Positions 21,201 to 38,624 of a stretch of DNA of 64,000 nucleotides are shown here, in pieces. Each line of letters begins with the position of its first letter. The stretch's first letter is position 1. The position numbers were made by a program, and so were the translations under genes. Below the pieces are notes generated by a model. The model did no database searches and had not been told where the DNA came from. It saw only the letters and a program-made list of their open reading frames with translations. This stretch comes from Cyanophora paradoxa CCMP329 (taxonomy: Eukaryota > Plantae > Glaucophyta): NCBI GenBank assembly GCA_004431415.1, contig QPMI01000484.1, positions 62,001 through 126,000 of the forward strand. The letters run 5' to 3'.

Positions 21201-22707
21201 CGGGCGCGCCGGGCGCGGCGGGGCGGGCAGACGGACGAGTCGGACGACGAGCGCCGAGAGCCGGCGGCCTCCAGGGCCGGGGCCGGGGCGGGGGCGACGG
21301 AGACGGGCGGGGGAACCCGGCGCCGGGCCTCAGCGCCAGCGACTCGGCGTACTGTCGGAGGGCGTCCAGGCGCCTCCGCTTGCGCTCGGAGTCCGAGAGG
21401 GCCGCCAGCTGACCCCCGCCGGCGCCCCGCCCGAGGGCGGGCTCTTCCGCTCGGGCAGCGGCGCCGCCGAGCGCACCGCCCGCGGCGGCGGCGGCTTCCC
21501 CTCCGGCGACCGCCACGGCGAGTAGGCCGGGAGGGCCGCCGGCCGTTGCCGTAGAGTGGGCGACCGGGAGCGCGCGCGGGCGGCGGGGGCGGCGTCCGTG
21601 TCTGACGCTGAGGCGGAGCTTGAGGAGAAGAGGGTCCGACCCGCCACCAGCGGCGGCGGCGCCGGCGTCGCAGCCGTCCGCTGCGCCCGCGGCGGCTCCG
21701 CGCCCCCCTTCGTCGGAGTGGACGCGGCGGAGCCTGCGGCGGCTGTCGGTCCGGCCCCGGGCGGAGAAAGAAGGCGGGCGGGCGGACCGGGGTTGGAGGA
21801 GAGCCCGGCGCGCGCGCGGTTGCGGAGGAGGTGTCGCTGGATCGCGTCCAGAATCTCCTATGGGAAGTGTGAAGTGCTGTGAAGTGCTACGTTAAAGATG
21901 AATGAAGGAGGAGCACCTGGTTGGTGACGAGGTTGCAGGCCAGCTCGAGCTGAACGACGCCCGAGTTCCTCGCGAGCGCCTGCGAGAGCTGGTTCGCGCC
22001 CCTGTTCGTGATGTTGCTGCGCGGGCCGTGTCGTGTCAGGATCGTTCGTGCGCGGCGAGAGATAAAGGGGGAGCAACCGCGCGGCGCCGCACTTCGAAAC
22101 TGCGCACGCGAAAGGAGTAAGGGGCGCGAGCGAACGAGCGGGCGGGCGAGCGTACAGAGGTTGATGTAGCGGAGGGACTCGTTGTTCTGCAGGGCGAGCG
22201 CGAGGCCCTCGGCGCACTGGTTCCCGATCTGGTTGTCCTTCGCTTCGAGCCGCTGGAGGCTCCGGCTGCGCTGCACCAGCTCCTGCAGGTGCGTCGCCGA
22301 CTCCTCCCCGAGGCCCGACCGGTCCAGGCAGAACGCCCGCAGCGCCGGCAGCCGCGCCAGCGCGCGGAACATCTGCGGGGCGCACTCCGCCAGCATGTTG
22401 CCGCCGAGGTCGACCTGTCAGGAGCGGAGTGGTTTGCAGTGAGCGCTCGGCGCCGAACGGATCCGGCGATCGGAGGCCAGCGCACCGACGTCAGCGACTC
22501 GTTCTCGCCAAGGCTAGCCGCGATGTCAAGGAGGGCACGCCGGCGAAGCCCGCAGCTCCAGAAGTCGAGAGTCTTTACTCGGCATGAGGCGGTCTGAAGG
22601 TACACGAGGGCGGGCTCGAGCTCCGTCGGCCCGACTCGCTGGAAACGAAAGCTGAGCTCGCTCTCTTCGTCGGCCGTGCGATTGGCGACGAAGCTAGACG
22701 ACGGCAT
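18247..22707 (-). CDS. Ribonuclease-inhibitor-type LRR protein with a long low-complexity C-terminal region; spliced
   Basis: N-terminal repeats VKTLDFWSCGL, SLTS|VDLGGNML, LQRLEAKDNQIGNQCAEGLALALQNNESLRYINL, NNITNRGANQLSQAL. Pro/Ala-rich downstream exons end in QAQAQAQA*. Internal exons are not fully resolved. Confidence 0.7.
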
Positions 22708-23844
22708 CGCTGCCGTCGTGTTCGAACTGGACGACGGAGGGGTGCGCTGGTCTCGTCGCCAAAGTGCTGGTGTCAGCGAGCTAGAGGACAAGCCGATGAT
22801 GGCGGCCGCACCGAACTCCGGCCACTCAAATGGCAACTGGCAACTGCCAGTTGGGGGCTACGCGAATTCAGCAGTGGCTAAAGCGAAAGCTGCAGCTGGG
22901 AGCGAGAGAAGCGCTAGCGCGCTAGGCGCCGCTAGCGCGGCTCCTGCAGGCCAAACTTTAAGCGGAGGGCGGCGTGCTGCCAGGCTGACGCACTGCGCGG
23001 CACGCGCACGTAGTACATACGCTTGCGCGAATTGCGCGCGGCCGCAGGCCGGAGCCTCGCAGGCTCCGGAGCGAGAGATTTAGAAGCGGCTTCAAGCGGG
23101 CACGTCAACTTATATATCTACGTACACGATGGACTCGAGCTCGCGCGCTCAGAGACCATGTGCGCTTGCGCATGCAACGCTCCGCGAACGCTTCGGATGC
23201 CATGATTTGCCGATGCAACTGTCAACTTTTGCAAGTTAAGCTAGCTCTTGCGCGCGCAACACATAGATACCTATACTGGCGCCGGCGCCGGCCACACCCC
23301 GGGCAGAGATCTCTGTATATAACTAGCTAAAGCCGCGCCTGCGTACGCGTGCCTCCGAGGATGAGGAGGAGAGGAGGAGCAGATGCACGACCATCTTGTT
23401 TTCACTGAGACCACAAACTGCTTCGATGTCTAGAGGTGCGTATGCACGCAGATCTACAGCCTGAACAACAGCGCCTATTTGAAGAGTCAGAAAGAAGCAG
23501 AGAAGACATCGAGAGCGAAGGATGATCGAACGAAAGCCTGCCGATGACACAAACACCATGGCCGCCCAAAGTTCGCTATATGCGCTGCTCCGACGCGATG
23601 CTTGGCAAAAGCCGCGCATGCGATATAACTGCAGATTGGCTGAAGTCCAGCAGGAAGAAAGTTCGCTGCAGCTGGGAACCAGAAGCTGCGCCATGTCGTG
23701 GCATCGGCCGTCGGACGCGCCCCCGTAGCTGCAGGCCTAGGCCTGGTGGCCACCGAGCCGAACAAGTGCTTGCGCGCGAAGCAGCGATGATAAGGCGCGG
23801 CTGAACGTCAATGACGGCGTCGAAGTTCAGGGACAGTGTGCCGA

Positions 23845-24255
23845 TTACGCCCCGAACTCCTCCACCGTGCGGTTTGCGAGCTGCAGAAAGTCCATGAACG
23901 AGCTGAACGCGATCCGCAGAAGCCGGAGCTCAGAGCACTCGAAGTTCCTTCGAAAGCGTCAGCTTCGTAGTCCACAGAAGCGTCAAGCTGCGAACGGCGA
24001 ACGACGCACACGATTAGCTTCTGTCCCTCGACCCGCATCGTGCGGTGGATCTTGTCCGGCTGGAGCTCGCCGTCCACGATCAGCGCGTTGTACACTACGC
24101 TCGCGCTCTGCTCCGTCGGATACTGCACCTCGAGCGTGCTGCGGCGCGAGCGATGAGTCCGCACTGCGAAGGGGCCGCGGGGGCACGGCTATGGCAAACG
24201 TCAGCGGGAAAGCATCCGCGCACTACTTGTGTGGCAGCTCCATCGCAGCCGCCAT
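23845..24255 (-). CDS. PCC1: EKC/KEOPS complex subunit Pcc1/LAGE3
   Basis: Three exons (24255-24224, 24138-24010, 23947-23845) give MAAAMELPHKYTLEVQYPTEQSASVVYNALIVDGELQPDKIHRTMRVEGQKLIVNFECSELRLLRIAFSSFMDFLQLANRTVEEFGA*, a typical Pcc1 pattern. Confidence 0.9.
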
Positions 24256-24650: not shown

Positions 24651-27600
24651 ATGGCGGACTCACAGGAGCATGCAACGGCGGCGGGCGCCAATGCCATGGC
24701 CGCACTGCTCGGGCTTGACATGGCGCCGCCGCGGAGGCTCTCCAACGCTGGGCTTCACGGTCTGGGCACCGGCCGGCGCGGAAGCAACGATGTCGCTACC
24801 AGCCCGGAACGCAGGAACAGCAACGCGTTGGCTGAGCCCAGGCACGAGAGCGGGGACTTCCGGACCCCGAGCTCAGAGCTCCTGCGCCGGAGCAGCAGCG
24901 GCGGCGGCGGCGCGGACCGGCGGGGCAGCGGGGTCGACCAGCGGCCGCGGAGGGACAGCTCCGTGAGCCCAGCGCCGCCGGGCAGGGCGGAGCCGGCGGC
25001 CGCGATTCCGGCACCGGCTTCGGGCCCCTTGCAGCCGATCCGGCCCTCCTCGATTCCCCTAGCTCGGCACGGGGACAGCGGCGAGGACCCGAGCAACGAT
25101 CGCCGGCGGCTTCGGCGCAGCGAGTCGGGGCAGGCGCCCAGCAGGACGCGGTTGGCATCTTCCGGCAGCTGGCGGGCCGAGGAGGGTCCCGCCGCGGTGC
25201 CCGAGGCCCCGCCGGGGGCCTCGCAGGCCGTCGTCGTGCAGCCGCTCTCGAGCGGGGCGGCCTCGAGCGGCGATTCCTCGGGCAGCCCGCGCGGCCTGGC
25301 CGCCGCCGTGCGACCCTCGCGGACGGCCCGAGTGGCGCCGCTGCCGCTCGGGCGCGCTCGGGAGGACACTCGGGACGGCGGCGGCGGGGCGAAGACGGGG
25401 CGGTCCGTCAGCAGCTCGACGGGGCGCATGCGCATGCCGACGCCGACGGGAGACCGCGCCACCCCCGACACCGGAACGCCGGGGGGACCCGGCCCCCGGG
25501 CCGCGCGGCGCATCCCGACCAACTCGCAGCTGCCGCTCACCTTCCGCATGCTGTCCCCCGGCGACTCCGACGGCGAAGACACCGACGAGGAGGCGGCGGC
25601 GGCGGCGGCGGCGGCCGGCCCGCGGCAGTCCCGCAACAACGCCTCGCAGAGCGACGCCGGGTCCCAATCGGGAGTCGGGGAGAAGCGGTCGAGCTCGGGC
25701 GCGGCGCGGCGGGTGCGGCGGGGCCTCCGGACGTGCAGCGCCCCGTTCCGCGCCCTATGGAGCAAGTACCTCGACATCAACGTGAGGAAGAAGCAGGTGC
25801 GGGCGGGACGGCGGGGCGGGGCGGCCCCCTCCGCTCTTAAGAAAGAAGGATACCTTTTAGCTAAAGCTTAAGGATACCTCTTAGCTCTGAGCTTAGCGGA
25901 AGGAGCAGGTGGGTTCCGCCCAAGCAAGAGCACCGCCTAGAGACTGCCGCCCGCCCCCGCCCCGCCGCCCCCGCCCGCCCCCCCGCTCGCTCGCTCACCG
26001 TGGGACGTACGCCCCCCGCCCCGCCCCGCCCCGCGCAGATTATCGCCCTGATCCTGTGCGAGTTCATCTCCGTCTCCGTCCTCATCTCCAGTGCGCCGCG
26101 CTTCGTCTGGTCTAGTCCAGTCCAGTCTAGCCTCGCCTCGCCTCTCTGCCTCTCCGCCTCGCCTCACCGACCGCCCGCCCTCGCGCAGTCCACGTCGGGC
26201 TTCTCGTGGCGGCCTCGCGCAACGACCTGGAGGCCATGGCGAGCAGCGGTGCGCGGGGCCGGACCGAGCTGCGCGGGGCCGGGTCGAGCCGGGCCGGGCC
26301 GGGCCGGGCGGCTGGGCCGGGCCTAGCTTAGTTAGCTTAGTTGCCCCCCCCCCCCCCCCCCCCCCCCCCCGCCCCGCTCCCTCCCCTCCCCCCCCTCCTC
26401 CTCCTCCCCCCGCCCCCCTGTCCCGCGCCCCTTATCAATCGCGGCCGAGATTAGCCGAGCGCCGCGCGCCCCTTGGAAGCGCCCGAGGCAGCAACAGGGC
26501 CTCTCGTCTAACCCCAACTTCCCCCCCTCCCCTCCCCCTCCCCCCCCCTTCAACTTCTTAGCGACCACAACTTCGCTGAGAGAGCGCGCGAGCGCGCCCC
26601 TCTTACGAACCTCGCGACCGCAGAGGTAATCACGGCGGAGCTGGTGTACGGCCAGAAGCTGGCCGAGCTCAGCGCCGCATTCAGGTGCGGCTCTTTCGTA
26701 AGGACGCCAAGACGCCCCTTAATGAGAGTCCAAGACGCCAAGCCAGTCTCTTGTTATTATCATCATTATAAGCTTCTAGAAGCCAAGCCTTCTAGGGTCT
26801 AGTCCATTCCAGTCTGGCCTAGCCTAGCCTAGCCTCGCGCCGCGCGGCATGGCCGACCCCCACAGCCTCCGCTGAGCGCCGCTTCTACAGCGGCCCAAAT
26901 CTAGCAGGCTCATAAGAGATCGAATGATTCGCTACGCTCATAGAGATCATAAAAGAGGCCATAAATCTGCGCTTGCCCGACGCCCTCCAGTAGCGGCGCC
27001 CCCGCCTCCGCCCATCCATAGCGAACCGTGGGGCCGGAGGCCTCAACCCCCCCGGAGAAATCTGCGCTCGCTCGCTCGCTTGCTTGCTCCGCCAGTAATT
27101 TGATCCGGGCCTTCGCTCGCAGCGGGCTGGCCGAGAACGTCAACGTGCTCCGGGCCATCGAGGCGTACTACGCGGGGGGCGGGGAGGGCCAGGCGCTGCT
27201 GGAGGCGGCGAGCAAGGCCCGCGCGGCGCTGCAGACCGAGGCCATCCGCTCCAAGATCGAATACGCGACGTGCGTCTTTGGTCTCGTCGATCTTAACCAA
27301 GCCATCCAACGAGGCTTCTTCTTCTAACGATGTTTCTAACTAGCGTACGAACTAACGAGTTCCTATCTAAGCCTCTTGTTCTAAGCCTCTTCTAGCCAAC
27401 CTTGGCTCCGGCTCCGGCTCCGGTGCTCTTAGCGTTCGGAGCGCGCAGGCTGGTGGCGGAGCGGGACCACCAGGTGATCGCGGGGGCGAACAAGAACCGG
27501 GTGGGGGAGCGCAAGTTCGACCTCGGCGGCCTCGTCGAACGCGCCATGCGCACCAACACGCAGGCGCGTTGACGCGCATACGCGTTCTCTAGAAGCTGGC

Positions 27601-28752
27601 TGTAGATGTCTCCTTGCTTCTAGCTTCTAGCTTCCCTCTTCATTCTCCCTCTCCCCCTACTCTCCGCCTCCTCTAACCTCCAGCCTCCTCCAGGTGCGGG
27701 GCACGGTGCTGGTGGGGCGGGCCGAGGTCGAGATCCAGGAGGGGATCATCCACCTCCAGTCCGCCCCGGACGGGCAGTACCTCGTCCGCGTCGTCGTCAC
27801 CCCGGTGCTTGATTCCCTCCTTCCACACTTCCCTCGAGTAGTAGTACTCGACCTATTTAGAAGATCGAAGCTGGATCGAAGCTCTAGTTAGAAGTGCGAC
27901 TGCAACTCCTATCAACTCTCATTTTCTTCGAGCTGATCGGCTTTCTAGACCAACTCACCGCTTTGTGCTTCTGACTTATCTAACCTCGCCTCGGCAGGTG
28001 TACCTCGTGGGCACCGTGGACACGAACGGGCGGCCCTCGGCCGTGCTGGTGGCGGGGGACATCGTCAACGGGAAGAGCGCCGTCGTCTGGCCCACCATGA
28101 TGGCGTTCAAGGCGGGGTACGCGCGCTTTCGCTTTCCCCGTCGGCCAAGATAGATAGATGGCCCATGATAGGCCCGCGGTGTTCTTATATATCTTTTGCG
28201 CGCGCAGCTACGTCGCTGTGTACCAGCAGGGACGCGACTCGGGGCGGGGCCTCCTCTCCTGCTCCCTATTCACGCCGGCACCCCAGCGTGCGAATTTCAA
28301 ATTTCAAATTTCCGAACGTTCAAAGTTCGAATTTTGTTTCGCAGGCTCCGTGACGGACAACCTGGACTTCGGCAACCCGAAGGGGTACGACCTCCTGGCG
28401 GACGCGCTGGCCGACCCGAACGCCGTACCCACCATCCGGTTCGACGTCAACGGCCACACCATGACCGTCGCCGCCAAGGTGCTGCCCATTGCGTACTTGG
28501 CTCTCTGTTTGCTAGCTGGATAGCTTGTTTATGTTGCCTTTTAGGCTAGATTCCCCTTCTTAGAGGAGCTAGCCGTTCGTTCTTCCGCTTCCCTGACGCT
28601 TTCTTTCTTCCGCCTCTTCAGGTCATCAAGGACGAGTCGAGCGGGCGGCCTGTGGGGTTCCTCGTCCGCGGCACGACGCACGCGAAAGCCAACGGTACCC
28701 CCCTATCTATCTATCTATCTATCGATCTATCTATCTATCTATCTATCTATCG

Positions 28753-28801
<49 letters not shown>

Positions 28802-31800
28802 CGTATCTATCGATCTATCTGTCTATCTATCTAACCGACCAAATCGAATCATCAGAGGTGCTGCGGGACACGCTCGTGATATCGCTCTCGGTCGTGGCGC
28901 CCATCCTCCTCATCAACTGGACGCTGGCGCTGTGGATGGGCAAGGCGATCTCGGACCCGCTGGCCTCGCTGCACCACACGGTGGAGCGGTTCTTCTCGGA
29001 GGACGTGGAGGGCGGCGGCGGCGGTGGAGGAGGCGCAGGAGCAGCTCAGAACGCTCAGAACGGCGGCGCCTCGGCTCCTCCGACGGCGAACAACAACAAC
29101 AAGCGGCACCCGTCGCTGAGGGCGACGATAAGGCAGAAGGACGAGGTGGGGAAGCTGGCGCGTGCCTTCCTTCAGATGGGCAAGCGCGTCAGCCAGGTCC
29201 GTCATCCAGGCAGGAGGGACGGTTAGATTCGATAAAGAGCACCGAGTGCATCATAAAGAGCACCGCCTTTCCTTAGAGTTAGGGTCCGTCCGTGCCAGCG
29301 CGCGCCGCGCGCTCTCCCCGGGACAGCTAGACTATAGGAGACACCGCCCGCCTCCGCTGCCTTTCCGTGCGCTGCATGCCTCCTGCAGGCTTGGGCCGCT
29401 AGCGTTCCTCCCTCGCACACCCTCGAGCGGCGCCCCCCTCTGACCCCCCCGACCTTCCCCGTCTTTGCCCTGGCGAACAGGCGTACCTGCGGGTGGAGGA
29501 GGCGCGCCTGAAGGCGAACGCGGAGGAGCACCGCACGCGCCAGATCATGGACACCGTGCGCGCACCCCAGCCCGCCCCAGCCCGCCCCGCCCCGCCCCCG
29601 CCCCCGCCCACCCCCGCCCCGCCCCGCCCCGCCCCGCCCCCGTTCCCGCCCCCGCCCCGCGCGCCCTCCGACGACCCCCCGGCCCCAGGCGAACGATGCG
29701 ATCTTCCTCATCGACGCCCGCTGCACCGTGCGCGATCCCAGTTCCTTCTTCTCGTCCGATCCGCCCCCTAACTAGAGCTCCGCCAGGTGGTGACGCTGAA
29801 CCGGCGGGCGGAATCGATGTTCCAGTACCCCGCCGGCGAGCTCGTGGGCCGCAACATCAACCAGGTCCGTCCCCCCGCCCCCCCGCCCCCCCGCCCCCCC
29901 GCCCGTCCGCCCGCCCGCCCGCCCGCCCGCCCGCCCGTCTGTCCGGGGGAGGGGGCGCCCCTCCTGTAAATATATCCTTCCTTTTCTTGCCCCTAGCTTC
30001 CGTCGCTCGTTCTAGCTTCTGTATGGGTAGAACGGCCCTCGGGCCCTTACTTACTCACGCCGGAGGCAGCGTTCCCCCCTGTAAACCAAATAAATACTTC
30101 CTTGCTTTTAGCTTCCTAGAAGCTTCCGTCTCTCCTAGAAGGGCCGTCTCTCTTAGAAGCTTCTGGCTTCCGTCTCTCCTTAGAGTGGCCCTGGTGCCCT
30201 TGCTCACTCACGCTGGGCGTGCAGATCATGCCCGAGGACACCGCCGAAGTCCACGACATCTACGTGCAGGTGCGGGCGGGCGGGAGGGCCGGCGGGCGGG
30301 AGGGCGGGCGCGGGGCTAGGAGGCGGCCAGCTTAGTTAGAGATAGAGAGAGAGAAGGGAAGAAGGGGCCTAGCCCGCACGACATCTACGTGCAGGTGCGG
30401 GCGGGCGCGGGGCTAGGAAGCGGCCAGCCGAGGCGCTCGGGGCTACGAGCCCATGCCCTCCGCGGCCCGCCCTCTCCTCGCCCATCACCTCACCTTCGTT
30501 CGCCTCGCAGCGGTACCTGAAGACGGGCCAGGGGCGGATAATCGGGAACATCCGCACGGAGTACGCCCTCCGCAAGGACGGCTTTGTCTTCCCTATCGAG
30601 CTCTGTGCGCACCGCCCCCGCCCGATCTCGCCCGCCCCCGCCCCACCCTGCCCCGCTTTCCGCTAGAAACTCGATAGAATCTAGGATAACCTTCCCCATC
30701 GGGATCTGTCCGCACCGCCCCCGCCCCTGCCCCGCCCGCTCTGCCTGCTACGCCCTCTCCGCTCGAAACTAGATAAAATCTAGGTAAACCCATCGAGCTC
30801 TGTCCGCACCGCCCCCGCCCGATCTCGCCCGATGTCGTCGCCCCGCCCGCCCGAAACTGGAGTACAGACGTTAACTTAGCTCCACGCGCTAGATAGAATC
30901 TAGGTGACCGTTCCTTCCCCATCCAGCTCTGTCCGCACCGGCCCCGCCCGCCCCCGCCCGATGTTGTCGCCCTGCCCGCACCGGCCCTGCTGCCACGCCC
31001 GCCCTCTCCGCCCGCTCGAAACTAGAGTGTACAGACGTTAGCCTAGCTCCACGTGACGGGCTAGCTCGCCGCCCACTGGATCGAGTGCACCGCGCGCGGC
31101 TCGATATCCTACCCGCTTTATGAATGTAATCCTTTACACGTCCGCAGCGATCAGCGAGATGGTGATCGCCGGGAACACCTTCTTCGTCGGCATGTGCGCC
31201 CTCCTCCTCCTCCTCCTCCTTCTTCTTCTTATAGGAGTCGTTTCCGAGCTTCTAAGGAGCTTCTAAGAGCTTTTTTCATACATCAAGCTTCTATCTACAT
31301 CTAGAAGCTGCCCCGCCCCCGCCCCGCCCCCGCCCCGACCGGCTTGATCTTAGCTTCTTAGCTTCTTAGCTTCTTAGCTTCTCGATCGCGCCCCCCCCCC
31401 CGCCCCCCCCCCCCCCCCCCCCACCCCACCCCCCCACCCCCCCCCTCTCGGCCCGCGCCCCCCCGGCCCCCGGCCCCCGCACCGCGAAGAAGACCGGCTT
31501 GATCTTAGCTTCTTCGCTTTGCCCCCGCCCCGCCCCGTACCGTCGATATCTGTGGGATGCCGAATAACCCAGCGGCCGCTCCGCCCCGCTCCGCCCCGCC
31601 CCGCCCCGCCCCCCCCCCCCCCCCCTTCCCCCGCCCCGCCCCGCCCCGCCCCTCCTCGGTCTTCGCCCCTGATCCTAGCCCCCTTCGTTCGCAGGATCCG
31701 GGACATCACGCAGCGGCGGGAAATGGAGGAGGAGCTCGAGCGGGAGCGGCACCGCACCGAGGCCCTCCTCGCCAACATGCTCCCCGCGGGGTCCGCCCTC

Positions 31801-34284
31801 CCCGTCTCTATCATGTATATATATGTCAGAGGCTATTTAGATCATGTAAACATCTCCTATCATGTATATCTATTTTAGAGGCCCCGACCCGGCCCGCCCG
31901 CTCCATATATCGCTTAGAGGCCCTCCTCGCCAATATGCTCCCCCCCCCCCCCCCCCCCCCCCCCCCGAGGCCCTTCCCAGCCCCGGCCCCCCGCTCTATC
32001 TACTTTTTATCTTTTATGCTATCCCATGCCAACATGCTATCTATCTGGGCTATCTATCTGGCCTGTCTATCACCTTAAATCATCCCCCCATCCCCCCCCC
32101 TCCCCCCATCCCACCGCCCCCCCCCCCCCACCCCACCCCCCTCACCCTCTCTCCTCCTATCTATCTGGCCTATCTATCATCTACTAGTATCACCTCTCAT
32201 TTATCTATCTGGCCTATCTATCACCCCCCTCCCCCCCCTTCCCCCTTCCCCCCCCGCCCTCCCCCCGCTCCCCACCCCACCCCACCCCCTCACCCTCTCT
32301 CCTGCTCTCGTTCGCAGGGTGGCGCAGCGTCTCAAGGAGATGCAGGACGCGGCGCTGGGGGAGGCGTTGAAGGGCGAGCGCGACCCCTGGGGCTCCGGCC
32401 TCCCCGCGCCCCCCAGGTCCGTCGACGCTAAAAATAGCTCTAAGCTCCGAACCGTTGGGGATAGCTTGGGCCGCCAGTCCGTCTTAGCTGGGGCTAGCTA
32501 GTGCTCAAGGGGGAGCGCTATCCTTGGGGCTCCGGCCTCCCCGCGCCCCCCAGGTCCGATCTGACCCGTCTGATCTGATCCGTCCCCCCTCCCGTCCGTC
32601 AACGCCAAAAATAGCTCCAAGTCTTGAGTTTCGGACAAAGTCCGCCCATCCGTCTCAGCCGGCGTCAGCTAGCTAGCTAGTCCACCCCTTCCCTCCCTCG
32701 TTTTGCCCAGCCCAGCTGCCCAGCTCTCTTGGGTCCTCCCGCCCACCCGATCGCACACTCGCGTTAGAACCTTTCACGGGACGCCCGGCCAACCTCCTTC
32801 TTCTCCTCCTTACTTCTACCCTCCTCTAACCTATCTAACCTACCCTAACCTCCACCCTAACCTCTTCCCGCTCGCTCGCCCGCCGCGCAGCGCGCCGCCC
32901 GTGATCGCGGCCTCGATGCTCTCGGGGCGGGGCGGCTCCCGCGGCGCCGTCAAGGGCGCCCTCGCCGACCGCGTCGAGAACGTCTCCGTCATGTGCGCCC
33001 TTTCTTCTTAAAGAAACGTGACTTCTCTAAGATCTTAGCTTATAATGTTATATTATACTCCTTGTTGCTAGATCGTCATCTCCGCGCCGCGCCCTTTTCT
33101 TTCTTCTTCCCTCTTGCAGGCATCCCAGGGCCCTAGCTAGCCCTTGCTTGCAATGACCCCGTACCGTGTCTGACCCCGTACCCCGCCAGGTTCGCGGACA
33201 TCGTGAACTTCACGCCGCTGGCCGGCTCTATGGACGCCGCCGACCTCGTCGGCATGCTGAACAGTGCGCGCGCCCGCCTCTGATTAGATTAGATTCGATC
33301 TTAGAGCTTGATTTAAAGCGCGCGCGCGCCTTCGATTCGATGCGATTGCGTCTCTCTTAAATTTGATCGCGTTCCGGGGGTACAGACATCTTCTCCGAGT
33401 TCGATTCCCTGGCGGAGAAATACGGCCTGGAGAAGATCAAGACGCTGGGCGACGCCTTCATGTGCGCCGGCGGCGTACCCCCCGAGAAGAGCGACAACCT
33501 CAGGGGCACCTACCACGTCGAGCGCATGGCGGTGCCCCTCCCCCCCCCCTTTTTCCTTCGCCCCTGTACCCCCCGATCGATCCTGTACCCCCCAGATGAT
33601 GGCCTTAGAGATGCACGAGGTGATCACGAAGTACAAGACATTCGACGGGCGCCCCTTCCGCATCCGAATCGGCATGCACCTGGGTACTGTCATCGCCGGC
33701 GTCATCGGAAAGAAGAAATTCCTGTACGATCTCTGGTGCGAACGAAGCGAAGCGGATCGAATGTTCTCGGATTCGATCCGGATCGAATGTTTTCGGCGCA
33801 GGGGCGACACGGTGAACATCGCGTCTCGCATGGAGAGCAGCGGGCTCCCAGGAGCCTCCCAGGTCTCCGCCGAAGTCTACGCGATGCTCCGCTACAAGTT
33901 CGCGTTCGAGGTCCGTACCCGTACCCCCCTTCCCGTCTCCTCTCCTCTCCTCTGCCAGCAATCCCGTCTGTTTGTTCTCACCGGATCGCTGTCGCGGTAG
34001 GACCGAGGCCGGATCCACGTGAAGGGCAAGGGCGACATGCACACCTACTTCCTCTTGAGGCCCCTGCAGGTCCGTCCGAGCTTTTTTAAGCTTAAGAAAG
34101 CATTTCTAAATAACTTAAGCTAAGAGCCACGTGTTACTTAAGCTAAGAGCAACGGTGAAGCTAACGCGTCGCACCTTTTTGCGCGCCCCTCTCCTCTCCC
34201 CCGCCGCTGCCGGCTTGACCCGCCCGGGCCCGCGCGTGCGCAGGCCCCGAAGCCGACGGCGGGACCCGCCTCCGCCTCGGTCAT

Positions 34285-34318
<34 letters not shown>

Positions 34319-37300
34319 CGCGAGCCGGCGGCGCTCGCGCTCGCTGTGGGCGCGCCCCTCTCCAAGTCGAAGCTCCCGCCCCTCGTCGTCTCCGGCGCCG
34401 GCGGTGGCCCCGCCTCCTCCTCCCCCCCGGCGGGGGCGCCGGGTCAGGACGGGATGGCCTCGCTCGTCCCCTCCGCGCCCCTCCCGCCCCTTCTTCGCCT
34501 ACAACACGACCGTGCGCCGCCTCTCCCCACCCCTCGCCCCCCATCTCTGAGTCGCTCCGCAGCGTTCGCGGCGGCTTCGGCGGCGGCGGCGGCGGCGCCC
34601 GCAGCGAACGAGTCGTCCCCGGGGCCCGAACAGGTTCGCTCGCTCGTTTGCCCTCCACTCCGCTCCGCTCTGCTCTGCTCCACGCACCCTCTAGACCTAA
34701 CCTAACCTAACCTAACCTAATCTGATGCAATTTAAGTGAGCCTCTCCAATCTAATACATGGCCCGGCCCAGCGGCGCCGGGCAGAAGGAGGCGGAGTGGG
34801 AGGACCTAATTGGGGATAAAAAGAGGGATAAGAGCAGAGACCCAACCTAAACTAATCAACCTAAGATTCTAAAGAGAGACCAGCCTAAAGAGATTTGATC
34901 CGGTCCGGTCTGATTTGATCCCGAGCAGAAAGAGGCGGAGTGGGAGGACCTAATTGGGGATAAAAAGAGGGATAGAGCAGAGACCAAACCTTAACTTATC
35001 AACCTAAGATTTTAAAGAGAGACCAGTCTAAAGACATAGTCTAAAGAGATTTGATCCGATCCGGTCTGATTTGATCCCGAGCAGAAAGAGGCGGAGTGGG
35101 AGGATACAGCGCGCAACCGCTCTTGGGGCCGCCACCACATTGGCCGCGGCGCCCTCACGCAGGCGGCCCTCTCGCTGCTGCTCCCCGCGCGGCCCGAGGA
35201 GCTCGAGGACGACGCGTACCCCCTCTACACCGTGAGTCACGCGCCCCGCCCCGCCCCGCCCTGCCCCGCCCCGCCCCACCCCACCCCGCCTCGCCCCGCA
35301 TGCCAAGCCTTCGCTGCGATCCGCTAACTAACTAGCCCCTCGATGTATCGCGCCCCTTCTTCCTCCCGCCCACATAGCCCTCCGCCCACATGCCAGGCCT
35401 ACTCTCTTGCTTACTCTCCCGGGCAGGTGCCGCACGGGGCGTACTGCAACCTCTTCCACTGGATGCTGGGGCGCCTCGGCCTCGTCGAGGCCTGCCGCAT
35501 CAAGGAGAAGCACCTCCGGTAACTTCTATCTAGGCTTCTATCTAGGAGAAGCACCTCAGGCCCGCCCCGGCCCCTCCCCGCCCGAAACTAGAGGCCATCC
35601 GCTCCAAGACCTCAATCTTCAGTCTCGTCGATCTTAATTAACCGAGCCCTCGCCCCTCGCCCTCCTCCTCCTCCTTCTTCTGTCCTTCTTCTTCTCATCC
35701 CTAGGTGCTCGATTTAATAAAACAGGATGGTTTTGAATAACTTGGATCGTTAGATTGAATTAATTTCTTGGCAGCCTTCTCATCGTACCCCCCTCCTCAG
35801 GACGTTCGCGGCGGCGGCTCTCTCGGGGTACCGCGCGGGGAACGCCTTCCACAACGCCGCGCACGCCCTCGACGTCGCCCAGATGCTCTTCGCCATGGTC
35901 CGCGACTATAAAACTATGAACTATAAAATATCAACTAGCTATGAACTATGAACTATGAACTAGTACATCCCAATTTGTCTCATTTTTAGTGTCTCTAGGT
36001 CTAGAGTTAGAGATGCTCTTCGCCATGGTCTCTCCGATCTGATCTAATACATACATCTGGCCAGGCTATGAACTCTTGATACATCTAATACATCTAATAC
36101 ATCTAGCTGATACAGCTCTGGCCATACATCTAATAGCTCTGGCCATACATCTAATACATCTAGCTGATAGTAGTAGCTGATATCATCTTGAGTCTAGAGA
36201 TGCTCGTCGCCATGGTCCGCGACCCGCCACTGGCTAGTTAACTATGAACGATAAACTATGAACTATGAACTATAGACTATGGACCAACTATGAACTATGA
36301 ACTAACAACTATGAACAACCTAACGAACCCGAACAACTCCCGCAGACGTGCTCGATGGAGCGGGAGCGGGTGACGCTCGCGCCGCCCGTCCCCATGGAGA
36401 TCACGGGGGGCGACGTCGCCACCTCCGCCGCCGCCAGCAGGTCCGCCTGAGAGAGGGAATCTCAGGGGGCGGCCTTAGAGAGAGCGAAGGGCCTCAGAGG
36501 GAACCTTAGAGGGAACCTTGGAGGGAACCAGCAGGTCCGCCTGCGCCGCCTGAGCCTTAGAGAGAACCTTGGAGCACGGCCTTAGAGAGCGGCCTTACAG
36601 CGCGGCCTTAAGAGCGCGGCCTTAGCGGGCGCGATGGGCCGAGGAGCATCAGTCAGCCTAGTAGCCGATGCGCTTAAGCTTTCTGACGCTGGGAACTCGT
36701 CGCCGGGCAGCGGCGGGGGCGGCGTGGGGATCCGCGCCCGCAGCGGCCGCATGCCCCCGCTCGACCACGTCGACCTCTTCGCCATCCTCGTCGCCGCCCT
36801 CTGCCACGGTACGCTTTGAAGTGATACGATACGATGTGATGTGATGTGATGTGATGTGATGTGATGTGAGCAGACCTCGACCACCCCGGCCTCACGAACC
36901 TCTTCCTCATCAAGTCCAAGGCGCCAATGGCGCTCCTGTACAGCAACAGCAGCCCGCTGGAGCGGCACCACTCGAGCCGCTTCCTCATGCTCCTCGAGCG
37001 GCCCGACCTCGACATCTGCTCGGGGCTGTCCCCCGCGGAGCGCCAGCGCTTCACGCAGTTCGTCGTGGACATCATCCTAGGTATCTAATCTGAAATCTTA
37101 TAGGAGAATCCTCTAATCTAATTTAATCTATCGATCCATCTAATCTAATCTAATCCAATCTAATAAGTATCTTCTAATAGAATCTATCTATCTAATCTAA
37201 TCTAATCTAATCTAATCTATCCATCTCAGCGACGGACATGATGGCGCACGGGGACTATATGGCGGCCTTCGCCCGCCGCTTCCGGGACCTTCCCCCCGAG

Positions 37301-38038
37301 GCCCTCGCCCGCCTCCCGTCCTCCGGCCAGCGCCTCGCCGCCCTCGACGACCGGGTGCGCCTTTTGTCGTCGTTGTTGTTTCTTCTTGCTTAGAGCGCGC
37401 TTTCTATCTTACTGGAGACCTAGAAATATTTAGTGAGCTGCATATTTATAGTACTAAAAGGTTTTGGGCGATCTACTAAATATTTGTTGTTTCTTCTCAC
37501 TTGGAGCGCGCGTTCTGTCTTACTAAGTTACTTTCTTTTAGACGCTGTTCGCCGGGATGCTCCTGAAGTGCGCGGACCTTGCGAACGCGGCGCGCACCTT
37601 CGAGAACAGCCAGCACTGGGCCGGCGCCATCCAGCACGAGTTCTTCGAGCAGGGGGCCCTCGAGCAGCAGCTGGGGCTCGAGATCTCCCCGGGGATGTCC
37701 CCGACCACCGAGCCCGACCTGGGCTCCTCCGCCCGCCAGGTGCTTCTATTTTTAGCTTCTCCCCCTCTCTTTATTTTTAGCTTATTCTCGATCAGGTCTT
37801 CTTCCTGGGGAACATCGTCCAGCCCCTCTACCAGGCCGTGGCCGAAGTCGCCCCCGACGTGCGTCCTTGTTTACTTGTGTTACCTAGTAGTGGATCATCT
37901 TCTTGCATTATATCTAACCATCTTATTACACCCATCTATCTTATTTTCGTCTTGCAGATCATGAGGCGGCCCCTGGCGAACGTGAAGAACAACCTGGAGT
38001 GCTGGAGGAGGGCGCACGCCTCCCTGTCCGCCCCCTGA
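24651..38038 (+). CDS. Membrane sensor - HAMP - heme-PAS - adenylyl cyclase - class I cyclic nucleotide phosphodiesterase fusion protein (~30 exons)
   Basis: TM1 IIALILCEFISVSVLIS (26039), TM2 TLVISLSVVAPILLINWTLALW, HAMP (ISDPLASL...QKDEVGKLARAF), PAS (29689-31715). Signalling helix RTEALLANMLP. Cyclase FADIVNFT, EKIKTLGDAFM, RIGMHLG, YDLWGDTVNIASRMES, VKGKGDM (33190-34069). PDE FHNAAHALDVAQ, AALCHDLDHPG, LERHH, ILATDM, LLKCADLAN, EFFEQG (35427-38038). Intron phases across the cyclase-PDE linker are compatible. Confidence 0.88.
28704..28832. repeat. (TCTA)n intronic microsatellite
   Basis: Directly visible. Confidence 0.95.
34781..35105 (+). repeat. ~145-155 bp tandem duplication containing three copies of an acceptor/exon start (GCAGAARGAGGCGGAGTGGGAGGA)
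   Basis: Copies start at 34781, 34925 and 35081, with near-identical spacers. Confidence 0.9.
35905..36320. repeat. Intronic (AACTATG)n / ATACATCTA arrays with duplicated exon end
   Basis: Directly visible. AGATGCTC(T/G)TCGCCATGGTC occurs at 35881, 36011 and ~36197. Confidence 0.85.
36832..37220. repeat. (GATGT)n (36832-36867) and (TCTAA)n (~37135-37220) intronic microsatellites
   Basis: Directly visible. Confidence 0.85.
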
Positions 38039-38624
38039 GAGGGGGACGTCCGCCTTCTGGGGACGCCTTCTGAGAGATGATGATAACAATAATCCTTTCG
38101 CGCCTCCTCTAGCTCCGGCCCCCCATAATACTAACCATCCTTTCACGTTGTATCTACCTCCACTTTCCTCCTCCCTTGGCTTTGATTTTTGCTTCGCGAC
38201 TTTCTATCTATTCAAGTAGTACGTATGGACTCATTTGATAGTGCTCGCCACCCGGCTAGGGCTTGCAATTGTAGGTGCTAGCTGGAGTCAGCCTCTTCTA
38301 GTAGTTACGGGGCCGGCACGGTACCGTAGTAGTTTGCCTTTCGAATTCGATTCGTGGATTAATGATTGCTTGCAAATGTGCTCCGTAGTTTTAATCGACG
38401 TGATCGTGGTCACGTTCGTCTCGTCTTCGAATTATGTATCAGTGCACTAAGGATTTATAGGTTTCGTCTCTACATTAATATTCGCGTCGTGTGCGCACTT
38501 CGTACAGTACCGTACTGCCGTAGACTGGGGTTCCTGTGAATTTCGAATTTGAATAACATAACACTTCTCTCCGGGATCCGACCGCGCGGCCTGCGGATCC
38601 GGCGCCTGCAGCTGGGTACCCTAT

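What the first reader, a model, noticed from the sequence alone, without database searches (positions are those of the whole stretch)
24651..38038. One polypeptide that senses, makes and destroys cAMP: TM-sensor-TM-HAMP-heme PAS-adenylyl cyclase-phosphodiesterase
Seen: the cyclase's last exon (ends 34069) joins 34244-34633, 35085-35231, 35427-35518 and 35801 onward with matching intron phases and no stop, leading into a complete class I PDE. The cyclase keeps both metal Asp residues (FAD, GDA), the ATP-specifying Lys/Asp pair (KIKT, YDLW) and N-x3-R. The PDE keeps FHNxxH, CHDxDHPG, the KCAD Asp and the invariant Gln. Known: AC+PDE fusions exist as CAPE in bryophytes and charophytes, but there the PDE is N-terminal and there is no sensor/HAMP/PAS input. 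Inference: this is a self-contained cAMP pulse generator gated by an external ligand and an internal gas/redox signal. I do not recognise this architecture from characterised proteins.
Basis: partly seen in the sequence, partly recalled or inferred. Interest (0 to 1): 0.92.

Follow-up and report, generated by a model that had tools for sequence, protein, structure and literature searches.

The report
Algal receptor making and destroying cAMP
This is a real, expressed gene of the alga Cyanophora paradoxa for one membrane protein that joins a cyanobacterial-type outside sensor, a probable oxygen-binding haem sensor, an enzyme that makes cAMP and an enzyme that destroys it; similar make-and-break fusions are already described in diatoms and mosses, so it is a new variant, not a new kind.

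Summary
Observation confirmed. A 38-exon model (24651-38038, 1730 aa, no internal stop) gives TM-dCache-TM-HAMP-PAS-class III adenylyl cyclase-class I PDE. The organism is Cyanophora paradoxa; its public model holds only the last 282 aa, but seven paralogous models also join cyclase to PDE. All catalytic residues of both enzymes are present. The PAS keeps the FixL haem His and both key Args. The sensor is about 30% identical to periplasmic domains of cyanobacterial taxis receptors. New here: six RRxS (PKA-type) sites in the cytoplasmic tail (0.9 expected), a possible feedback input. The fusion principle is known: diatom receptor GC/PDEs (two TMs, both enzymes inside) and plant CAPE (reverse order). 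'Pulse generator' is unshown; a sensor-gated cyclase with a loosely tethered PDE that sets a bounded local cAMP level is likelier. Exons 1-19 rest on homology, not RNA. The scan found this architecture before on paralogous DNA of this genome.

The parts
24651..38038 (+). Whole gene, 38 exons, 1730 aa
   Evidence: model, open frame; RNA joints for exons 20-38
24651..25787 (+). Cytoplasmic low-complexity N-terminal tail (aa 1-379), exon 1
   Evidence: not RNA-tested
24732..24959 (+). Cluster of six RRxS (PKA-consensus) sites, aa 28-103
   Evidence: 6 observed, 0.92 in shuffles, p 0.0004; reversed motif 0
25788..26221 (+). TM1 (aa 380-410), exons 1-3
   Evidence: hydropathy; aligns with TM1 of cyanobacterial receptors
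26222..28694 (+). Extracytoplasmic double-Cache sensor, exons 3-11, related to periplasmic domains of cyanobacterial GAF-MCP taxis receptors and histidine kinases
   Evidence: 29-35% identity over about 370 aa; fold from paralog g16603:
28858..28944 (+). TM2 (aa 700-728)
28945..29196 (+). HAMP domain with a Gly/Asn-rich insert between its helices
   Evidence: PF00672, E 3.5e-5
29535..31728 (+). FixL-type PAS (aa 832-950, exons 13-19); H887, R893, I902, I903, R907, L923 match SmFixL His194, Arg200, Ile209, Ile210, Arg214, Leu230
31729..31790 (+). Signalling helix and cyclase transducer element (NMLP)
   Evidence: HNOBA hit on exon 19
32318..32967 (+). About 50-aa insert between transducer element and cyclase core (exons 20-21)
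32968..34069 (+). Class III adenylyl cyclase catalytic domain, exons 21-26, all catalytic residues present
34244..35231 (+). Pro/Ala/Gly-rich linker, exons 27 (34244-34511), 28 (34563-34633), 29 (35085-35231)
   Evidence: joints
35427..38038 (+). Class I (HD-type) cyclic nucleotide phosphodiesterase, exons 30-38
   Evidence: last 282 aa = EukProt tig00020849_g14635

Best explanation
The gene encodes one dimeric membrane receptor. Shown: a single spliced open frame with the domain order TM-dCache-TM-HAMP-PAS-cyclase-linker-PDE and intact active sites. Inferred: a small outside ligand bound by the dCache domain, and O2 (or CO/NO) bound to haem in the FixL-type PAS, act through one coiled-coil spine (TM2-HAMP-PAS-signalling helix) to set the activity of the homodimeric adenylyl cyclase. 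The PDE hangs on a long flexible linker, so it is probably not switched by that spine; it fixes a 1:1 ratio of sink to source at the same membrane spot, giving a bounded, local cAMP signal that falls quickly when the input stops and depends little on how much receptor is made. The six RRxS sites in the tail may let a cAMP-dependent kinase feed back on the receptor (weakest step). The protein is a chimera of a cyanobacterial-type sensor, a bacterial-type PAS and cyclase, and a eukaryotic PDE, expanded into a family in Cyanophora.
For: Open frame over 37 introns; RNA joints cyclase>linker>PDE in three runs, no coverage inside intron 28; seven public Cyanophora models with cyclase then PDE, forming one clade in the cyclase tree (8 rows, support 99) and PDE tree (7 rows, 100); catalytic residues; FixL best structural-sequence match and conserved haem residues; dCache fold; linker composition; RRxS enrichment.
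Against: No activity, haem binding or ligand has been measured. No single RNA contig spans the GGC run in exon 27. Exons 1-19 untested by RNA. The sensor's conserved helix motif (YxIKxNQMxFGFxGQ in relatives) is altered in this copy. The RRxS cluster is absent from the tails of two paralogs, and PKA presence in Cyanophora was not checked. The public model splits the gene.
Confidence: 0.62

Rival explanations
1. Reciprocal switch or true pulse generator: the sensors turn the cyclase on and the PDE off (or the PDE is turned on after a delay, e.g. by phosphorylation of the tail), as in some GGDEF-EAL hybrids.
For: Both active sites intact; fusion kept in at least eight paralogs; RRxS cluster could supply delayed feedback.
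Against: About 160 unconserved low-complexity residues separate the enzymes (no paralog match to the linker); no GAF, UCR or cNMP-binding regulatory domain before the PDE.
Confidence: 0.2
2. One polypeptide, but the PAS is not a haem gas sensor (it binds another cofactor or only relays the HAMP signal), or only one of the two enzymes is active in the cell.
For: Many PAS domains with the HD motif are uncharacterised; paralogs g16603, g12720 and g12721 have lost the RIIG-x-R loop, and g22247 has a degenerate PDE, so the family tolerates loss of function.
Against: This copy keeps His194, Arg200, Ile209, Ile210, Arg214 and Leu230 equivalents without gaps and every catalytic residue of both enzymes.
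Confidence: 0.15
3. Two adjacent genes (receptor cyclase, separate PDE), as the public annotation implies.
For: Public model g14635 covers only the last 282 aa; RNA contigs break in exon 27.
Against: The cyclase exon is spliced to exon 27 with no stop; the break lies in a 32-nt GGC run entered from both sides at similar depth; g14635 starts after the first two catalytic His, inside an intron; seven paralog models are fused.
Confidence: 0.03

Closest known systems
Diatom receptor GC/PDE fusions (Seminavis robusta; PMC4726125, PMC8027222)
   Same: Two TMs around an extracellular stretch; cyclase and class I PDE together in the long cytoplasmic C-terminal part; multigene family
   Different: Predicted guanylyl, not adenylyl, specificity; no HAMP or haem PAS described; no diatom protein came up as a full-length relative, so probably independent (not tested with diatom sequences)
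CAPE of liverworts, mosses, ferns, charophytes (PMC5159850)
   Same: Class III AC plus class I PDE in one chain; both activities shown for MpCAPE
   Different: Reverse order (PDE-TMs-AC), single copy, no dCache/HAMP/PAS; a CAPE-order protein found here (P0014) has a cyclase only 25% identical
Cyanobacterial Cache-HAMP-PAS-adenylate cyclases (e.g. Roseofilum, P0156)
   Same: Same input spine and the most similar named cyclases outside Cyanophora (55-60%)
   Different: No PDE; their Cache and PAS are different families from those here
Cyanobacterial GAF-MCP taxis receptors (PixJ/PtxD type) and related histidine kinases
   Same: TM-dCache-TM-HAMP segment, 29-35% identical over about 370 aa
   Different: Output is MCP or kinase; none of 80 loci has a cyclase output. 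The PixJ label rests on architecture and gene order (patA-cheY-cheW-MCP-cheA) and my own knowledge
FixL / DosP haem-PAS O2 sensors; Leishmania globin-coupled adenylate cyclases (PMC7719234)
   Same: Haem-type gas sensor upstream of a signalling enzyme; O2-sensing cyclases exist in eukaryotes
   Different: FixL drives a kinase, DosP an EAL domain; Leishmania uses a globin, is soluble and has no PDE
Bacterial Cache-HAMP-PAS-GGDEF-EAL hybrids (e.g. P0176)
   Same: Same logic and order: sensors, synthase, hydrolase; P0176 has the closest non-Cyanophora PAS found (41%)
   Different: c-di-GMP, unrelated catalytic domains: analogy only

Membership tests
CAPE | N-terminal PDE, C-terminal AC | tested here: not met
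   Order is AC then PDE
CAPE | TM segments between the two enzymes | tested here: not met
   Both TMs precede both enzymes
CAPE | Class III AC and class I PDE with conserved metal ligands | tested here: met
Diatom GC/PDE | Two TMs, extracellular stretch, both catalytic domains cytoplasmic and C-terminal | tested here: met
   against PMC8027222
Diatom GC/PDE | Guanylyl-type substrate residues | tested here: not met
   Lys1081/Asp1156 adenylyl pair
Diatom GC/PDE | Common descent of the fusion | not tested
   No diatom sequence was retrieved, so none is in the trees
Class III adenylyl cyclase | Two metal Asp, Lys/Asp adenine pair, Asn-x3-Arg | tested here: met
Class III adenylyl cyclase | ATP to cAMP activity | not testable with these tools
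   needs assay
Class I cNMP PDE | H-x3-H, HD, Asp metal ligands, invariant Gln, Phe clamp | tested here: met
Class I cNMP PDE | cAMP selectivity | tested here: inconclusive
   Best PDB matches PDE4 and trypanosome PDEB1, Asn after CADL kept, but PDE3 and PDE9 score only 6-10 bits lower
FixL-type haem PAS | Proximal His, distal Ile/Ile/Leu, Arg200 and Arg214 | tested here: met
FixL-type haem PAS | Haem and O2 binding | not testable with these tools
   needs spectroscopy
dCache sensor | Long helix plus two PAS-like modules between two TMs | tested here: met
   Model of paralog g16603 sensor, pLDDT 89; top matches TlpA, DctB, LuxQ; this gene's sensor is 31% identical to it. No Pfam Cache hit

The most novel reading that the evidence does not exclude
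A glaucophyte took a cyanobacterial taxis-receptor sensor (possibly from the plastid ancestor) and built a eukaryotic single-chain cAMP circuit that integrates an outside chemical with cellular O2 through a FixL-type haem, with its own PDE and a kinase feedback tail giving adaptation. It would be the first haem-PAS-gated cyclase/PDE and a direct cNMP counterpart of GGDEF-EAL receptors.
Probability: 0.3. Interest if true: 0.78.

Novelty: new variant of a known kind. Interest (0 to 1): 0.56.

Why it matters
Nothing on cyclases or PDEs is mentioned in the Cyanophora genome paper's main text, and no paper found describes this family. It gives a testable one-gene model of how fusing a source and a sink shapes cAMP, a candidate O2 input to cAMP in an early-branching photosynthetic eukaryote, a case of a cyanobacterial periplasmic sensor reused in host signalling, and a natural scaffold for self-limiting cAMP tools. 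This copy is a good one to test, since it keeps the full FixL residue set. It also corrects a split public gene model.

Tried and rejected
Separate PDE gene: rejected. Cyclase-only isoform through the two decoy copies of the exon 29 acceptor (34785, 34929; both would stop after 21 codons): no joint to them among those listed and zero depth at 34688-34886; minor use is not excluded. Pfam and PDB sequence searches of the sensor: no credible hit. Relatives of the family outside C. paradoxa: none in the 50% library, the 90% library or metagenome contigs; only 26-48% generic PDEs without a cyclase hit nearby; length filters, candidate caps and introns limit these blanks. Cyanobacterial origin of the cyclase: most similar named hits are cyanobacterial, but the quick tree leaves the Cyanophora clade outside them and unresolved (careful search unfinished), so not claimed. 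Shared origin with CAPE-order P0014: a join at 89 flagged as long-branch meeting, not accepted. First intron-copy control was uninformative; redone. Paper searches for glaucophyte cAMP, FixL-like algal proteins and PixJ Cache ligands gave nothing relevant.
Full report
Gene model. The region is a GC-rich, intron-dense eukaryotic gene. Using splice-site anchors I built a 38-exon model from ATG 24651 to TGA 38038: 5193 nt, 1730 aa, no internal stop; 36 GT-AG introns and one GC-AG; donors mostly GTGCG or GTCCG; third-position GC 0.89-0.97 in all parts against 0.59 GC in introns. Method note: the joined model was built and compared only inside local scripts; searches with the database tools used single exons or one intron-spanning open frame by reference, or stored paralog proteins. 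The joined search step was left out.

RNA. Six runs guessed to be RNA hold 24-35% of the words of 33100-38100, about the exon share. Four were laid on 32300-38250. Listed GT-AG joints match the model at 13 of my introns among exons 20-38 when the stated offsets are applied, including 34069>34244 (three runs, two studies) and 34633>35085 (four runs, three studies); 11 further joints were not shown. From record lengths I infer that a 464-nt contig runs from cyclase exon 23 to about 34313 and a 903-nt contig from about 34292 through the linker into PDE exon 34. They meet in a 32-nt GGC run inside exon 27 at similar depth (34/26, 14/15, 38/42). This is not a one-molecule bridge, but two transcripts ending and starting in the same short run of one open exon is very unlikely. 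One contig carries about 109 letters beyond exon 20 on the 5' side, consistent with exons 19 and 18. Exons 1-19 were otherwise not tested (one call, 6 kb limit). Low-depth intronic pieces at 35920-36292 in X15 may be unspliced RNA or DNA.

Organism and family. The PDE exon 36876-37079 is 100% identical to EukProt Cyanophora paradoxa tig00020849_g14635, a 282-aa model that begins in an intron and lacks the first two catalytic His. Seven other Cyanophora models carry cyclase then PDE: g13247, g14659, g16603, g12720, g12721, g22247, g21544; g16603 (1499 aa) and g12721 (1417 aa) have the full sensor-HAMP-PAS front. They group with this gene in quick trees of the cyclase (support 99) and the PDE (100, g21544 not included). 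g22247 has lost PDE metal ligands.

Domains. Single exons hit HAMP, PAS, the HNOBA helix, Guanylate_cyc and PDEase_I in order. The cyclase has D1041, D1085, K1081, D1156, N1163, R1167 and VKGKG, the full set for a homodimeric adenylyl cyclase (roles from established class III knowledge). The PDE has H1427, H1431, H1506, D1507, E1536, T1577, D1629, N1632, Q1683, F1686, aligned to PDE4; selectivity for cAMP is likely, not settled. The PAS of paralog g16603 matches FixL best in the PDB (E 3e-23), and exon 17 of this gene alone finds only FixL. Counting from the proximal His without gaps, H887, R893, I902, I903, R907 and L923 equal SmFixL His194, Arg200, Ile209, Ile210, Arg214 and Leu230; PMC10765370 names His194 as haem ligand, Ile209/Ile210/Leu230 as the distal face and Arg200 as important for signalling; the O2-binding role of Arg214 (Bj Arg220) is from my own knowledge. 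Three paralogs have lost this loop, so this copy is among the most FixL-like.

Sensor. The segment TM1-sensor-TM2 aligns over about 370 aa at 31% with a Leptothoe chemoreceptor (E 6e-34 pairwise), in frame across ten introns, which also supports the untested exons. A genome scan found 358 related loci; 77 of the best 80 are labelled cyanobacteria (the patterns and ranking came from an alignment led by a cyanobacterial sequence, and the other 278 were not seen). Their outputs are GAF-MCP or histidine kinase, never a cyclase, and several lie in patA-cheY-cheW-MCP-cheA clusters. The paralog's sensor folds with pLDDT 89 as a double Cache domain, as the language-model search also suggested. The ligand is unknown. 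A cyanobacterial source is likely; plastid descent against later transfer was not tested.

Tail. Residues 28-103 carry six RRxS sites; shuffles give 0.92 (p 0.0004; still below 0.01 after 15 tests), and the reversed motif occurs 0 times. Two paralog tails lack such a cluster, though several paralogs have two or three RRxS elsewhere. RRxS is the PKA consensus, but other basophilic kinases use it too.

Mechanism. Shown: one frame, domain order, intact active sites, expression of the 3' half. Inferred from bacterial receptor cyclases: dimer, signal passed along TM2-HAMP-PAS-signalling helix to the cyclase. Inferred from the long unconserved linker: the PDE is a tethered sink rather than an allosteric partner; a fixed source-to-sink ratio would make steady cAMP depend on the input rather than on receptor number, and would reset it fast. 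A pulse needs feedback, for which the tail is the only hint.

Known kinds. CAPE has the reverse order and no sensors (PMC5159850). Diatom GC/PDEs have two TMs, an extracellular stretch and both enzymes C-terminal, occur as a family, and were thought unique to diatoms (PMC4726125, PMC8027222). So a receptor cyclase/PDE fusion is a known kind; the adenylyl version with a cyanobacterial dCache, HAMP and FixL-type PAS is not described in papers I could search. Earlier notes of this scan reached a similar verdict on paralogs and gave me the diatom lead, which I checked in the papers; their agreement is not independent evidence.

Verdict. Real; new variant of a known kind; interest 0.56.

Noticed in passing
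window introns at 30377, 30695-30979, 31919, 32525, 34785 and 34929, 35544, 36011: Introns hold copies of the neighbouring exon end plus splice site (up to 67 nt at 97%). Exon 14-mers found in introns: 39 of 1483 near exon edges against 2 of 2877 internal. Local duplication at splice boundaries could be a route to intron growth or splice-site sliding.
   Followed up: partly
window 35593-35645: Intron 30 carries a decayed copy of the end of exon 5 and its downstream intron (about 27238-27300), 8.3 kb upstream in the same gene.
   Followed up: partly
window 27564-27693: GC-AG intron needed to keep the frame in the sensor; not RNA-tested.
   Followed up: no
window 38038-38560: RNA contigs run about 300 letters past 38250, so the 3' UTR probably overlaps the end of a convergent minus-strand frame at 38470.
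   Followed up: no
window 23808-24164 (-) and 21860-22590 (-): A short minus-strand gene lies head to head within 500 nt of the ATG (resembles the EKC/KEOPS Pcc1 subunit, from memory, untested); further upstream a leucine-rich-repeat gene.
   Followed up: no
P0275 (g22247): Paralog with two FixL-like PAS domains, intact cyclase and a PDE lacking metal ligands: a pseudo-PDE member.
   Followed up: partly
L081:795-5828 and L082:4001-11554: Two intronless metagenome proteins (1677 and 2517 aa) with a divergent N-terminal cyclase and C-terminal class I PDE, unrelated to this family: further independent cyclase-PDE fusions of unknown eukaryotes.
   Followed up: partly
P0014: Metagenome protein PDE-ion-channel-like TM-cyclase, CAPE order, source organism unknown.
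   Followed up: no
L001-L080: A widespread cyanobacterial dCache family with no Pfam model and no solved structure.
   Followed up: partly
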